From the IMG/VR virus record IMGVR_UViG_3300009508_000011, positions 124,001 to 188,000 of that record: a DNA stretch of 64,000 nt. One strand, given 5' to 3'. Below, in pieces: positions 60,087 to 63,000 of the stretch. Below the pieces are notes generated by a model, which did not search any database, was not told the DNA's origin, and saw only the letters and a list, made by a program, of their open reading frames with translations. The number at the start of each line of letters is the position of its first letter. Position 1 is the first letter of the stretch. Position numbers and translations under genes: made by a program.

Positions 60087-63000
60087 ATGTCACAGTTAGA
60101 TGTTTTAATGCGCGACCAGCATTCCCTACTGCGTGTACGCAAGATAATGCAGAAGCAAACAGACGGTGCGTGGAATACCATGTACTCTCTAAGTAACGAT
60201 GCTGAAGTTTCTACTGCATGGGAAACTGGTGTGCAAACCCAGACCCAATGGGATTCTATTTTCACCACTAGTCACAGCACAATCAGTGCGTTTGATACTG
60301 ACGTTGTTACTAGTAAACAAACAGGCACGGCTTGGATTACTGACCGAACTACCGACGCTTCTAGAATAACTGCTGCTTCTACTCAAACAGAGTGGACTAC
60401 CAGTCGTATTACAGAACACGCTACTTCTCAGGATACCCAAACCAACTGGAACATTCAGACGACAACTTCTTTTGTTACTGACCAAACCACACAAACCGAT
60501 TGGACGTCTAATCGTCAAACTGACTATAGCTATTCTAAGTCAACTACGACCAATTGGACTACTGTTGTGGATACAACTTTAACTACCAATAGAAGTACAA
60601 CGACTCAATGGACGACGTCTCACTCGTCAGCTACTATGTGGACTACAAGTCACAGTACTGATTATAATACGTCACATACTACTACTACCTCATGGAATAC
60701 CAGTCAGGCTACCAACAAGTCAACTACGACCCAATGGACTACTGCCCGCGATACAAGTAATAGTACTTCCAAGTCTACCAATACGGTATGGACAACTGGA
60801 CACGCAACGACTAGAACCACTACGGTTAATAAAAATACCGCAGGTACTACGTCACGCAGTACTAGTAGGTCTACCTCGACTGCGTTCAATACGTCAGTAA
60901 CAACTAGTCACAGTACTACAACTCTGTGGGGCACTGCTGTAACAACAACGTTCAGTACTAGTAGGTCCACGAGTACTAGTTATGGAACATCGTATAATAC
61001 AAGTAGAAGTACAGCTACCAGTTTCAATACTTCACACAGTACGACAAAGACCGCATCTAGAAGCACAACAACTTCTTACAATACTACCTGGGGAACTTCT
61101 CACGGTACGTCTAAGTCTACTTCGTATAGTGCAAGTACTAGTTGGACTACTTCGCATGGAACGTCTAGAAATACCTCTTATAGTGCTACTACTACTTGGA
61201 GTACTGCTAAATCAAAGACAACGTCTAGGTCTACGACAAAGTCAAAGACAACGTCTAGGTCTACGACCAAAGCAGCTAGTAGAACCACCACATGGACAAC
61301 TAACTATTGGACATTTTGGGGTGAGGATTGGGATGGTGCTGGTGGTTCAAGTAGACAGACAAGTAGAAGTACTTCTGGTACTACTTCCTGGAATTACTCT
61401 GCAACAACTAGTTTCAGTACTAGTTACGCTGCCAATACGTCGTATACAACCTCGTATTCAGCTAATACTAGTAGGTCTACGACCAAGTCTCGCTCTACTT
61501 CTTTAACAACTAGTTATAGCACTAGTAGGTCTACGACCAAGGCACGTACTACTAGCTACACTACTAGTTACAATACGTCTAAGTCTACGTCTAAATCTAC
61601 TAACACTTCTTGGGGTTACTCTGCCAATACTACGTATGGTACATCCAAGAATACTGTAACTACTTTTGGTACTTCCCACACCACTTCCAAGAGTACAAAT
61701 ACTTCTTGGAATACGTCACGTGGTACTACTAGAAACACGTCTAGAACCACAAGTACTGCGTATGGAACTACGTGGGTAACGTCTAAGAGTACTAACACTA
61801 CTTATAACACGACTTACGCCACAACTAAAGTTACTACGTCTAGTTGGTCAACTGGGTACACTACTAACTATGCCACTAACAAGTCAACTACGACTACGTG
61901 GACTACGACGAAGAGTACCAACGTGGTGACTGGTAAGTCAACAGATACTACATGGACAACATCGTGGGGTACGTCTAAATCCACTACGACTACTTACGCA
62001 ACTGCTAAGGATACTAATTACCAAACATCGTTCGGTACATTAACTAGTTATACGACTTCCAAGTCTACTACTACCTCCTTTACAACAGTTCGTGAGACTA
62101 ACAGAACCACAAGTCAGGCAACTAACACTGCTTGGTCGGTAAGTTCTACCACTAGTGTTGCAATGAGTACCTCGACCACCACGTCTTGGGACACAAGCAA
62201 GTCTACCTCTGAAGCTAGAAGTGGGACAACCACAACTGCATGGACTACATCGTATAGTACTAACGTGCAAACAACTATCATGACTACAACAAACTGGATG
62301 ACTTCATTCCAGCGTCAGACTGATATTGATGCAGGTAAGACAACTACAACAAACTGGGTCACTCAAGTGGCAACAACCACAAGTTGGACTACGTCTTATA
62401 GTACCGGTGTATCAACGGTTAAGTTTACCAATTCAAATTGGACGACTTCGGCCAATACCACTAAAGAGGTTGGTGAACTTACTACGTCGGCAACGACTAC
62501 GTGGACAACCATGCGTAATACCCAAAGTGTGTTCAATACCGCAGGTGATGCTTCTGTGGCTACGGATACTTCTTGGACTACCGCTAAATCTACGTTAACT
62601 GTTTGGTCAACGAATACTTCAGCGACTACTCAAACAACGTGGTCAACTGATGGTACCATGACCACTAGCGTTGAAATAACTTGGAATACTACCGAATCTC
62701 GTAATACAGATTTGGGTGCCGGTACTATGATTAGTACTGACTTCTTAGTTAGCACAAGTCGTTATAGTGACAGACAAACTGATGGCTCGTTCAATACTTC
62801 CGTATCCACTGCAACTGCATGGGCTACTGATACAGTTAAGTCAACGACAACATCGTGGCAAACTACTATATCAACCACCACTACGGTAGCTGGTAATGTA
62901 CAAACTACGACTACGTGGACTACGTCTTACAGCACAACTGCTGATGTTACGTATACTACAAATGCTGACTACACTACCCAGTGGACTACTGCTAGACAGA

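What the first reader, a model, noticed from the sequence alone, without database searches (positions are those of the whole stretch)
60273..62400. Every histidine in the hairpin faces a tyrosine: possible covalent cross-linking code
Seen: all 11 His in the hairpin pair with Tyr (H65:Y773, H113:Y725, H181:Y657, H191:Y647, H199:Y639, H241:Y597, H277:Y561, Y305:H533, H319:Y519, H341:Y497, H359:Y479). Most Trp pair with Lys or Arg, and many Arg or Lys pair with Tyr. Known: His-Tyr (dynobactin, biarylitides), Lys-Trp (streptide, darobactin) and Arg-Tyr (ryptides) are covalent cross-links made by radical-SAM or P450 enzymes, although on short intra-strand spacings. Inference, speculative: the rungs could be enzymatically stapled to stiffen an otherwise floppy ribbon. 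The simpler explanation is non-covalent H-bond or cation-pi packing. No such enzyme is visible in this window.
Basis: inference. Interest (0 to 1): 0.7.

Follow-up and report, generated by a model that had tools for sequence, protein, structure and literature searches.

The report
Mirror-coded giant hairpin phage fibre
A jumbo-phage tail-fibre gene encodes a roughly 380-rung beta-hairpin in which every histidine sits opposite a tyrosine; the same rule holds in a phage with no cross-linking enzyme, so it is probably ordinary side-chain pairing, yet this phage does carry a radical-SAM maturase-like gene between two such fibre genes.

Summary
In the 1025-aa ORF (window 60081/60087..63158) all 11 His between residues 65 and 773 face Tyr under i+j=838. 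That axis is unique, with p<5e-6 by permutation and 7e-5 within basic:aromatic pairs.

The rule is conserved. Seven related phages give 89 His:Tyr rungs out of 93 His rungs. The two arms stay in one gapless register for 197-489 rungs, indels are mirrored in both arms, and His:Tyr arose at least 7 separate times. His:Tyr commonly swaps with Arg:Phe; His:Phe and His:Trp never occur.

A 319-aa radical-SAM protein with a SPASM/twitch-like tail starts at window 63944. It lies between this fibre and a second hairpin fibre, and the arrangement recurs in all seven loci that extend far enough.

Against a cross-linking code: T4-like hairpin proteins (Stenotrophomonas phage DLP6 type) show His:Tyr 11 of 11, and the DLP6 genome has no radical SAM. 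The code also includes Arg:Val and Lys:Ala, and slipped registers create like-with-like clashes.

Best reading: a non-covalent pairing code that fixes the register. The enzyme probably modifies the fibres in some unknown, more limited way.

The parts
59713..60072 (+). Small 119-aa protein with a fibre-type N-terminal (Mtd_N-like) domain, directly upstream of the fibre. It is a separate gene: a different frame here, and the same frame but separated by a stop in L003.
   Evidence: Pfam Mtd_N 1.1e-4, below the cut-off. A 119-146-aa gene sits at the same place in L003, L014-L017 and L020.
60087..63158 (+). Hairpin fibre 1. It has no Cys and is 34% Thr and 17% Ser.
   Evidence: There is no Pfam, PHROG or NCBIfam family for it. 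Orthologues are 57-76% identical.
60201..61334 (+).
   Evidence: Gapless register i+j=838. Rungs keep their register in five orthologues, so indels are mirrored in both arms.
61256..61413 (+). Conserved tip module (residues about 392-444, turn at about 414-423). It is 91.8% identical in DNA to the tip of fibre 2, and it is the only stretch the two fibre genes share at the DNA level.
   Evidence: blastn of fibre 1 against fibre 2. It is the most conserved block of the arm alignment. The tip of fibre 2 is shown.
61338..62471 (+). C-terminal arm of the hairpin (residues 420-797).
60273..62399 (+). Span from His65 to Tyr773, which holds the 11 His:Tyr rungs of the finding.
62472..63155 (+). C-terminal Thr-rich region of about 228 aa outside the hairpin. 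No convincing second hairpin was found.
   Evidence: Self-reverse alignment score 27, within the control range of 33-39.
63167..63186 (+). GC-rich stem-loop just after the fibre's stop codon. It may be an attenuator or terminator ahead of the two enzyme-like genes.
   Evidence: Consensus scan only.
63199..63975 (+). 258-aa protein of unknown family. It overlaps the radical-SAM gene by 32 nt. It is present with the radical-SAM gene in all nine loci that hold it, and neither gene was recognised in L026, the related locus without a radical SAM.
   Evidence: Invariant residues are C110, C111, C123, H193, D194 and H256. AF2 gave pLDDT 55.6 with a Rossmann-like alpha/beta core. Fold matches to GT-B glycosyltransferases and EarP are weak, TM about 0.3. 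Co-occurrence.
63944..64000 (+). Start of the 319-aa radical-SAM gene with a SPASM/twitch-like tail. It runs off the window to genome position 188903, which would be window 64903. A second hairpin fibre of 1464 aa follows at genome 189018-193412.
   Evidence: PF04055 scores 46.2 bits against a cut-off of 29.5. Motif C16-x3-C20-x2-C23 plus invariant C218, C234, C275 and C318. Best NCBIfam match is the PapB maturase at 1e-22, below its cut-off. Closest solved structures are CteB (5WGG) and anSME. Fibre 2.

Best explanation
The ORF is a tail fibre of an uncultured marine phiKZ-like jumbo phage. Residues of about 41-797 form one very long two-stranded antiparallel beta-hairpin of about 378 rungs. 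At the usual 3.3-3.4 A per residue that is roughly 125-130 nm (length is inferred).

**The rung pattern.**
- On one face, Thr:Thr rungs alternate with rungs that pair an aromatic residue (W/Y/F) with a basic one (K/R/H).
- The other face carries small polar residues.

**What the code does (inferred).** The sequence of complementary rungs is a non-covalent pairing code with two jobs.
- It stabilises the ribbon through cation-pi pairs and Thr ladders.
- It fixes the register of a low-complexity repeat, because a slip of four residues puts aromatic opposite aromatic and basic opposite basic.

**Why His faces only Tyr (inferred).** His is short and largely uncharged, so it gains little from a Phe or Trp ring. 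It can, however, accept a hydrogen bond from the Tyr hydroxyl. When Tyr becomes Phe, His is replaced by Arg.

**The enzyme.** The radical-SAM/twitch enzyme and its 258-aa partner, encoded between the two hairpin fibres, are not the cause of the His:Tyr rule. They most likely make a limited, still unknown modification of the fibres. The conserved tip shared by both fibres is a candidate site.

**Shown versus inferred.**
- Shown: the mirror register, its conservation, the covariation, the enzyme's family and synteny, and the rule's presence in a phage free of radical SAM.
- Inferred: the physical hairpin, the H-bond, the register-keeping role, and any enzyme action on the fibre.
For: **The hairpin is real at sequence level.**
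- The axis is unique and highly significant.
- An alignment scheme blind to His gives one gapless register of 197-489 rungs in every intact fibre of seven phages.
- Block-shuffled controls score 33-39, against 146-416 for real fibres.
- An ordinary MSA of six orthologues keeps 284-376 of 378 rungs in register although arm lengths differ. Indels are therefore compensated in both arms.

**The His:Tyr rule is conserved.**
- His partners pooled over the clade: Tyr 89, Ala 3, Leu 1, Trp 0, Phe 0.
- 21 distinct rung columns carry His in at least one orthologue, and 20 of them have Tyr opposite.
- At least 7 gains are specific to a single lineage.
- The commonest alternatives at those rungs are R:F (13), R:V (9), R:Y (8) and K:Y (7).

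**The code is register-specific.** The true register has 48 aromatic:basic, 1 aromatic:aromatic and 0 basic:basic pairs. Shifts of +/-4 give 17-19, 3-13 and 6-14.

**The rule does not need the enzyme.**
- DLP6-type T4-like baseplate proteins have 200-266-rung hairpins with His:Tyr 11 of 11, although Phe partners outnumber Tyr (F:R 228 against R:Y 116).
- The DLP6 genome has no radical SAM.
- An unrelated fibre, P0039, has His:Tyr in 8 of 9 cases.

**Some specific pairs have no known cross-link chemistry.** R:V occurs 42 times and K:A 35 times.
Against: - No structure supports the hairpin. AF2 on a 301-aa fragment gave long strands on either side of the tip but a mean pLDDT of only 37.5.
- A peptide-maturase-like radical SAM sits between the two fibre genes in all seven loci that extend far enough, and it is the genome's only radical SAM.
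- Fibres linked to the enzyme are rich in Trp, Tyr, Lys and His. These are the residues joined by known radical-SAM cross-links. The two enzyme-free hairpin lineages use mostly Phe:Arg.
- The H-bond explanation of His:Tyr is an inference with no geometric test.
- One hairpin from elsewhere (P0029) has 2 His:Trp beside 2 His:Tyr.
Confidence: 0.7

Rival explanations
1. Covalent rung stapling. The radical-SAM enzyme abstracts a hydrogen from one rung residue and joins it to its cross-strand partner (His-Tyr, Lys-Trp, Arg-Tyr). The pairing code would then be a map of staples that stiffen the ribbon.
For: - The radical-SAM gene with a SPASM/twitch-like tail and four extra invariant Cys lies between two hairpin fibres in all seven loci that extend far enough.
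- Its best family matches are peptide and protein cross-linking maturases: PapB 1e-22, QhpD, CcpM, GggB and DynA. Its closest solved structure is CteB.
- The rung pairs match residue pairs joined by known radical-SAM enzymes (DynA, StrB, RrrB; from my own knowledge).
- Sactipeptides such as thurincin H are hairpins stapled by one such enzyme with nested links at constant i+j (from my own knowledge).
Against: - His:Tyr exclusivity holds in DLP6-type hairpins, and the DLP6 genome has no radical SAM.
- A sister fibre has a hairpin with no radical SAM within 10 kb.
- The same rung changes between H:Y, R:F, K:W and R:V among orthologues. One enzyme would need very broad chemistry.
- R:V and K:A are equally specific pairs.
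- All family scores are far below the equivalog cut-offs, for example DynA 36.7 against 450.
- About 50-100 links per chain, at one SAM each and with the slow turnover typical of these enzymes, would be costly (inference).
- The enzyme has no recognition (RRE) domain.
Confidence: 0.1
2. The radical-SAM enzyme, together with the 258-aa protein, makes a limited modification of the fibres that is unrelated to the His:Tyr rule. This is compatible with the best explanation. Possibilities are a lock at the conserved tip shared by both fibres, a few Lys-Trp or intrastrand aromatic-x-Thr links, or oxidation or epimerisation of Ser/Thr.
For: - Synteny is conserved, and the gene overlaps the 258-aa gene by 32 nt.
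- The enzyme and the 258-aa gene are kept in L021, where fibre 1 is replaced by a non-hairpin protein. They are therefore not tied to fibre 1 alone.
- The tip module is 91.8% identical in DNA between fibre 1 and fibre 2, and it is the best conserved part of the arms.
- anSME and QhpD are precedents for SPASM enzymes acting on whole proteins (from my own knowledge; both families are matched).
Against: - There is no direct evidence that the fibre is the substrate.
- The complex prediction gave no answer.
- The fibre has no Cys, so the chemistry of the best-matching families (thioethers, formylglycine from Cys) cannot apply as such.
- Gene position alone does not prove function.
Confidence: 0.4
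3. A fibre glycosylation module. The 258-aa protein would be a glycosyltransferase-like enzyme decorating the Ser/Thr-rich fibres. The twitch-type radical SAM would tailor the sugar, as BtrN-type enzymes act on small molecules.
For: - Weak Foldseek matches of the 258-aa model to GT-B glycosyltransferases, EarP and sugar epimerases (E 3e-4 to 5e-3, TM about 0.3).
- Only one auxiliary-cluster set of Cys, as in twitch enzymes.
- The fibres are about 50% Ser plus Thr.
Against: - The model has pLDDT 55.6, so fold matches are unreliable.
- No sequence family was found for the 258-aa protein.
- The radical SAM's best matches are peptide maturases rather than sugar enzymes.
Confidence: 0.12
4. The mirror code reflects antiparallel pairing between two chains (the N-arm of one with the C-arm of another) rather than an intramolecular hairpin.
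For: A mirror register by itself cannot tell intra-chain from inter-chain antiparallel pairing (logic).
Against: - The register runs without a break right up to a short Gly/Asp/Pro-rich conserved turn.
- The AF2 model, though weak, places strands directly on either side of that turn.
- The rungs nearest the tip are the most conserved.
Confidence: 0.08

Closest known systems
Cross-strand pair preferences in beta-hairpins (Thr:Thr, Lys/Arg:Trp cation-pi pairs, tryptophan-zipper-type designs); from my own knowledge
   Same: The same kinds of favourable lateral pairs sit on one face of an antiparallel two-stranded sheet.
   Different: Here the pairs extend over about 200-490 consecutive rungs with no register break. 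There is a strict rule that aromatic faces basic, plus an exclusive His:Tyr rule.
T4-like 'baseplate wedge subunit' proteins of the Stenotrophomonas phage DLP6 type (Pfam PF23786 N-terminus)
   Same: The C-terminal half is a gapless 200-266-rung Thr-ladder hairpin with aromatic:basic rungs, and His faces Tyr in 11 of 11 cases.
   Different: The N-terminal domain and phage lineage differ. Rungs are mostly Phe:Arg and Arg:Tyr with almost no Trp or Lys. The DLP6 genome has no radical SAM.
Sactipeptides and SCIFF peptides and their radical-SAM/SPASM maturases (CteB, PDB 5WGG; AlbA; thurincin H and subtilosin A hairpins)
   Same: CteB is the closest solved structure to the enzyme, and the start of the SPASM motif aligns. 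The products are hairpins whose arms are joined by nested links at constant i+j (from my own knowledge).
   Different: Those substrates are peptides of 30-50 aa with a leader and with Cys donors, and the enzymes carry a recognition domain and two auxiliary clusters. Here the fibre has no Cys. The enzyme has no recognition domain and only four extra conserved Cys.
Radical-SAM enzymes that form His-Tyr (DynA, dynobactin), Lys-Trp (StrB, streptide; DarE) and Arg-Tyr (RrrB, ryptides) links
   Same: They join the same residue pairs that make up the rungs. DynA is among the weak NCBIfam matches at 2.4e-9.
   Different: Known links span 1-3 residues within one strand of a short peptide. The DynA score of 36.7 is far below its cut-off of 450. 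Only the shared radical-SAM core matches.
Anaerobic sulfatase-maturating enzyme (anSME) and QhpD: SPASM enzymes that act on whole proteins
   Same: Both are matched by sequence. Both modify full-length proteins without a leader peptide (from my own knowledge).
   Different: Their target motifs (Cys or Ser in a sulfatase motif; Cys-Asp/Glu thioethers) are absent from the fibre, and the scores are far below the cut-offs.
Classical phage fibre folds (triple beta-helix, beta-spiral, T4 gp34/gp37 type)
   Same: A long, thin, beta-rich virion appendage. Fibre 2 carries a baseplate-attachment domain shared with phiKZ-like tail proteins.
   Different: Those folds are built from parallel chains running one way. 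Here each chain doubles back on itself, so the N-terminus and residue ~800 lie at the same end.

Membership tests
Radical SAM superfamily | CxxxCxxC cluster motif and a match to PF04055 above its cut-off | tested here: met
   C16-x3-C20-x2-C23 is invariant in 11 orthologues. PF04055 scores 46.2 bits against a cut-off of 29.5.
SPASM subfamily (two auxiliary 4Fe-4S clusters) | C-terminal domain with seven or more Cys, including Cx9-15Gx4C and CxxCx5Cx3C, and a PF13186 match above its cut-off | tested here: not met
   PF13186 scores 19.1 and 18.4 bits against a cut-off of 21.5. Only the first element (C218-x10-G-x4-C234) plus C275 and C318 is conserved, and there is no CxxCx5Cx3C. This fits a twitch-like or reduced SPASM domain with one auxiliary cluster (inference).
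PapB-type ranthipeptide maturase (NF047865) | Equivalog score of at least 340 bits; substrate with Cys and Asp/Glu | tested here: not met
   80.7 bits. Fibre 1 has no Cys.
Sactipeptide/SCIFF maturase (CteB type) | N-terminal recognition domain, two auxiliary clusters, Cys-donor substrate | tested here: not met
   The radical-SAM core starts at residue 8, so there is no N-terminal domain. TIGR03974 scores 36.2 against a cut-off of 425. The fibre has no Cys.
DynA (His-Tyr and Trp-Asn cross-linking maturase, NF041298) | Equivalog score of at least 450 bits | tested here: not met
   36.7 bits, and the best-matching stretch (residues 12-82) lies in the radical-SAM core.
RiPP system (leader peptide plus recognition element) | A short precursor with a leader; a PqqD-like recognition element fused to the enzyme or encoded next to it | tested here: not met
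   The candidate substrates are proteins of 1025 and 1464 aa. Neither the enzyme nor the 258-aa protein matches a PqqD-like family.
Covalently cross-linked protein (His-Tyr) | A chemical bond between the paired side chains | not testable with these tools
   This needs mass spectrometry or a structure of native fibre.
Intramolecular antiparallel beta-hairpin | Residues i and S-i are cross-strand neighbours. Sequence proxies are one mirror register, compensated indels and pairwise covariation. | tested here: met
   The sequence proxies are met. The structural test is inconclusive, because the AF2 fragment has pLDDT 37.5 with strands on either side of the tip.
Phage tail fibre or virion appendage | Lies in the tail/baseplate gene block; has an attachment domain shared with known tail proteins | tested here: met
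   - The neighbouring 362-aa protein matches Mtd_N, Phage_fiber_2 and tail PHROGs.
- The N-terminal domain of fibre 2 matches phrog_2163 and tail proteins of phiKZ-like phages.
- Fibre 1 itself is assigned by synteny and by the shared tip only.

The most novel reading that the evidence does not exclude
The radical-SAM/twitch enzyme and its 258-aa partner covalently modify the hairpin fibres. They might lock the conserved tip or staple some aromatic:basic rungs with C-C or C-N bonds. This would be the first RiPP-style radical maturation of a virion structural protein, acting across the two arms of a 100-nm beta-hairpin.
Probability: 0.2. Interest if true: 0.9.

Novelty: new variant of a known kind. 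Interest (0 to 1): 0.72.

Why it matters
Three points matter if this holds.

1. **A fibre architecture I found no description of.** Each chain folds back on itself into a two-stranded ribbon of hundreds of rungs. The sequence carries a readable, evolving pairing code (Thr:Thr, aromatic:basic, His only with Tyr). Arm lengths change only by mirrored indels. This gives a natural, very large data set on cross-strand pair preferences and on how a low-complexity repeat avoids slipping. It could also guide the design of long beta-ribbons.

2. **The architecture is not confined to this phage.** It appears in T4-like baseplate proteins and in other uncultured phages, so a sequence-only detector could annotate many 'hypothetical' Thr-rich phage proteins.

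3. **A new kind of enzyme-substrate pairing is now testable.** A peptide-maturase-like radical SAM wedged between two such fibre genes makes a concrete question testable: do phages use radical chemistry to mature virion proteins? The candidate enzyme-substrate pair is clear, and a cultured phage (DLP6) serves as an enzyme-free control.

Tried and rejected
**Searches that found nothing.**
- Megablast of the region against GenBank phages: no match.
- Pfam, PHROGs and NCBIfam on the fibre: no family. The only hit was a compositional one to a serine-rich protein.
- The search for related loci with the fibre itself: no pattern matched.
- The search for related loci with the N-terminal domain of fibre 2, singly or as an alignment: only the two known relatives. 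A presence/absence test inside the clade was therefore not possible.
- Seven literature searches found no description of giant hairpin fibres or of a radical SAM acting on phage structural proteins.

**Predictions that gave no usable answer.**
- AF2 of a 301-aa hairpin fragment: pLDDT 37.5, usable only as weak support.
- AF2 of the 258-aa protein: pLDDT 55.6. Foldseek and Atlas matches are weak and mixed, so they are a lead only.
- Complex prediction of the enzyme, the 258-aa protein and the fibre tip: no answer.

**Ideas tested and rejected.**
- A second hairpin in the C-terminal 228 aa: the score is within the control range.
- A frameshift or read-through joining the small Mtd_N gene to the fibre: the two are in different frames here, and in the same frame but stop-separated in L003, so nothing is conserved.
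- A DNA palindrome as the cause of the mirror pattern: the His and Tyr codons are not reverse complements, and the symmetry exists only at the protein level.

**Hits set aside.**
- The distant radical-SAM hits L004-L012 match only the core at about 30% identity. They lie in unrelated multi-radical-SAM clusters without Thr-rich fibres.
- The profile-search hit P0025 is a bacterial serine-rich adhesin and matches by composition only.
- A DNA-hypermodification role for the radical SAM was considered. The gene has no match in phages known for that chemistry and does not lie in a nucleotide-metabolism block.
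Full report
**What is there.**
The finding lies in a 1025-aa ORF (window 60081..63158, + strand). The likely start is the ATG at 60087, which has a GGGGAG 6 nt upstream and matches the start of the L003 orthologue. The protein has no Cys and is 34% Thr and 17% Ser. No Pfam, PHROG or NCBIfam family matches it.

The window is positions 124001-188000 of a 206,117-bp virus record with terminal repeats. It encodes split RNA polymerase beta subunits, a tail sheath and a giant tail protein with a lysin domain. 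These mark it as a phiKZ-like jumbo phage. Related contigs include Tara Oceans metagenome assemblies, so the lineage is marine. The genes around the ORF are fibre genes:
- a 362-aa protein with Mtd_N and phage fibre repeats;
- a 119-aa Mtd_N-like protein directly upstream.

**The observation.**
Pairing residue i with residue 838-i puts all 11 His between 65 and 773 opposite Tyr. Odd positions alternate between two kinds of rung:
- T:T rungs (88);
- rungs pairing an aromatic with a basic residue: K:W 11, H:Y 11, R:Y 7, R:W 7, K:Y 6, R:F 5, K:F 3.

Even positions hold small polar residues. Among all possible axes, 838 is unique: it gives 11 H:Y and 100 T:T, and no other axis exceeds 4 and 79. 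Shuffling partners among the non-T:T rungs never reaches 11 in 200,000 trials. Even within the 50 basic:aromatic rungs the exact probability is 6.7e-5.

**Is it a hairpin?**
I aligned each fibre with its own reverse, using a scoring scheme in which His scores zero against everything. Every intact fibre of the clade gave one gapless register:
- 316-489 rungs in fibre 1 orthologues;
- 197-343 rungs in fibre 2 orthologues.

Block-shuffled versions that keep the four-residue repeat score 33-39, against 146-416 for real fibres. An ordinary MAFFT alignment of six fibre 1 orthologues, made without reference to pairing, keeps 284-376 of 378 rungs in register. The mirror sums nevertheless differ widely (755 to 1114). 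Insertions and deletions have therefore been mirrored in both arms. This is strong sequence-level evidence that i and S-i are physical neighbours.

AF2 on a 301-aa fragment around the tip gave long strands on either side of the turn. Its pLDDT was only 37.5, so it adds little. At the usual rise per residue, 378 rungs would be about 125-130 nm (inference).

**The His:Tyr rule across relatives.**
Pooled over 13 intact fibres of seven phages, the partners of His are Tyr 89, Ala 3, Leu 1, Trp 0 and Phe 0. Lys and Arg, in contrast, face all three aromatic residues:
- K:W 92, K:Y 88, K:F 38;
- R:W 77, R:Y 53, R:F 71.

In six fibre 1 orthologues, 21 distinct rung columns carry His in at least one sequence, and 20 of them have Tyr opposite. 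At least seven are gains specific to one lineage. At those rungs other orthologues most often have R:F (13), R:V (9), R:Y (8) or K:Y (7). When Tyr is Phe the partner is Arg, never His. Other pairs are equally specific:
- R:V 42 against K:V 7;
- K:A 35 against R:A 7.

Aromatic:aromatic and basic:basic rungs are almost absent.

**A register-keeping code.**
In the true register, fibre 1 has 48 aromatic:basic, 1 aromatic:aromatic and 0 basic:basic rungs. Sliding the arms by four residues keeps Thr opposite Thr, but it gives 17-19 aromatic:basic, 3-13 aromatic:aromatic and 6-14 basic:basic rungs. The same holds in the 489-rung orthologue and in fibre 2. The order of rung types therefore penalises slipped registers of an otherwise monotonous repeat (inference from these counts).

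A search of the whole genome for PF04055 found exactly one radical-SAM gene. It starts at window 63944 and runs off the end of the window. Its main features are:
- the invariant motif C16-x3-C20-x2-C23;
- a C-terminal C218-x10-G-x4-C234 element that aligns with the start of the SPASM domain of CteB;
- two further invariant Cys, C275 and C318.

PF13186 (SPASM) is just below its cut-off. The best NCBIfam matches are peptide or protein cross-linking maturases: PapB at 1e-22, then QhpD, geopeptide, anSME, CcpM, GggB and DynA. All are far below their equivalog cut-offs. The closest solved structures are CteB (5WGG) and anSME. There is no N-terminal recognition domain.

The gene overlaps by 32 nt a 258-aa gene of unknown family (window 63199..63975). 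That protein has invariant Cys-Cys-x11-Cys, His and Asp residues. Its AF2 model is poor (pLDDT 55.6). The model resembles Rossmann-type glycosyltransferase halves only weakly.

Directly after the radical SAM comes a second hairpin fibre of 1464 aa. Its N-terminal domain resembles tail proteins of phiKZ-like phages.

The order is: small Mtd_N gene, fibre 1, 258-aa gene, radical SAM, fibre 2, GH108 lysin.
- The full order recurs, besides the window's genome, in L003, L014, L015, L017 and L020. The radical SAMs are 57-83% identical.
- L002 and L016 show the same order but are cut by contig ends, and fibre 2 of L002 is frameshifted.
- In L021 fibre 1 is replaced by a non-hairpin protein, yet the 255-aa gene and the radical SAM remain.

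The genome has no P450, PF13640 dioxygenase or haem peroxidase. No cultured phage in GenBank carries a close homologue of this radical SAM.

**Does the enzyme explain the His:Tyr rule?**
Probably not. Four results bear on this.

1. A protein search with the fibre found 'baseplate wedge subunit' proteins of T4-like phages, the Stenotrophomonas phage DLP6 type. Their C-terminal halves are gapless hairpins of 200-266 rungs built from T:T, F:R and R:Y. Every His inside those hairpins faces Tyr (11 of 11, at several different rungs), although Phe partners are twice as common as Tyr.
2. The complete DLP6 genome has no radical SAM.
3. A more distant relative of fibre 2 (P0030, 44% identical in the N-terminal domain) also has a hairpin. 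Within 10 kb on either side no called gene has a radical-SAM Pfam hit and no gene was recognised as the 258-aa homologue.
4. An unrelated fibre (P0039) has His:Tyr in 8 of 9 cases, partly through internal tandem repeats. A Tara podovirus-like protein (P0029) has 2 His:Tyr and 2 His:Trp. No radical SAM appears in the sequence available for either, but both contigs are short or only partly fetched.

The rule is thus a property of this kind of ribbon. The simplest physical reading is that a short, mostly neutral His gains little from a Phe or Trp ring but can hydrogen-bond to the Tyr hydroxyl (inference, not tested geometrically).

**What the enzyme may do.**
Its position, its conservation, its family resemblance and its coupling to the 258-aa gene make action on the fibres the most economical guess. 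I put that at about 0.4-0.5, and nothing here shows it.

Full stapling of every rung is unlikely for three reasons:
- the rungs are evolutionarily fluid;
- many rungs have no plausible chemistry;
- roughly 50-100 SAM-consuming, slow turnovers per chain would be needed (inference from general knowledge of these enzymes).

One candidate site is the tip. About 50 residues around the turn are the best conserved part of the arms. They are 91.8% identical in DNA between fibre 1 and fibre 2, and this is the only similarity the two genes share at the DNA level.

Sactipeptide hairpins, stapled by one SPASM enzyme with nested links at constant i+j, are the nearest precedent for cross-arm stapling (from my own knowledge). 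They need Cys donors, however, and this fibre has none. The complex prediction gave no answer.

It may be relevant that enzyme-linked hairpins are rich in Trp, Tyr, Lys and His, whereas the two enzyme-free lineages use mainly Phe:Arg. With so few independent lineages this is only an anecdote.

**Verdict.**
- The hairpin is well supported by sequence.
- The His:Tyr rule is best explained as non-covalent pair complementarity that also helps to fix the register (confidence 0.7).
- The covalent-code reading is unlikely for His:Tyr (about 0.1).
That is new and worth an experiment.
- I found no published description of either feature in seven searches, although subscription journals are not covered by the library.

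Noticed in passing
genome 189018-193412 (L018:1019-5413), just beyond the window end: A second hairpin fibre of 1464 aa. It has a 530-aa N-terminal domain like tail proteins of phiKZ-like phages, followed by a hairpin of about 200 rungs (register sum 1564) and a further Thr-rich tail of about 480 aa.
   Followed up: yes
window 61256-61413 versus L018:3283-3440: The hairpin tips of fibre 1 and fibre 2 are 91.8% identical in DNA over 158 nt, while the rest of the two genes shows no DNA similarity. This suggests gene conversion or strong selection on a shared tip module.
   Followed up: partly
L002:3873-8368 (IMG/VR contig 3300002038_000006): In this relative the fibre 2 gene changes reading frame at the hairpin tip. 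The called 1098-aa product (P0007) ends in an out-of-frame Leu/Val-rich tail. This could be an assembly error or a real frameshift.
   Followed up: no
window 60982-61506 (+), 60704-60889 (-), 61616-61798 (-) and others inside the fibre gene: Long alternative-frame ORFs inside the Thr-rich repeat. They are by-products of the repetitive codon pattern, not genes.
   Followed up: partly
window 58919-59539 (-): A NUDIX-like gene (phrog_8902; weak PF00293 match) on the opposite strand, inserted between fibre genes. An opposite-strand gene of the same size sits there in L003 and L014, and L014 and L020 also carry a PHP-domain gene nearby.
   Followed up: no
window 63167-63186: A GC-rich stem-loop right after the fibre's stop codon. 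It may lower read-through into the 258-aa and radical-SAM genes.
   Followed up: no
window 13798-17769 (-), 18176-19810 (-), 19883-26293 (+), 2123-4195 (+): Split RNA polymerase beta subunits, a 2136-aa tail protein with a peptidase/lysin domain, and a tail sheath. These place the phage among phiKZ-like jumbo phages.
   Followed up: partly
P0001 / L019:8001-11867 (Stenotrophomonas phage DLP6) and P0002-P0013, P0026: T4-like 'baseplate wedge subunit' proteins carry a C-terminal mirror-coded hairpin of 200-266 rungs built mainly from Phe:Arg and Arg:Tyr rungs. The record's annotation does not mention it.
   Followed up: partly
L021:3-3853 (Tara Oceans scaffold): In this relative the fibre 1 slot holds a 940-aa non-hairpin protein and a 310-aa protein with similar C-terminal ends. 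The 255-aa gene and the radical SAM are kept, and the contig ends before any fibre 2.
   Followed up: partly
own fibre 1 His rungs: There is an arm bias. In fibre 1 orthologues His sits in the N-arm and Tyr in the C-arm in 43 of 50 cases. In fibre 2 the bias is absent or reversed. This is unexplained.
   Followed up: no
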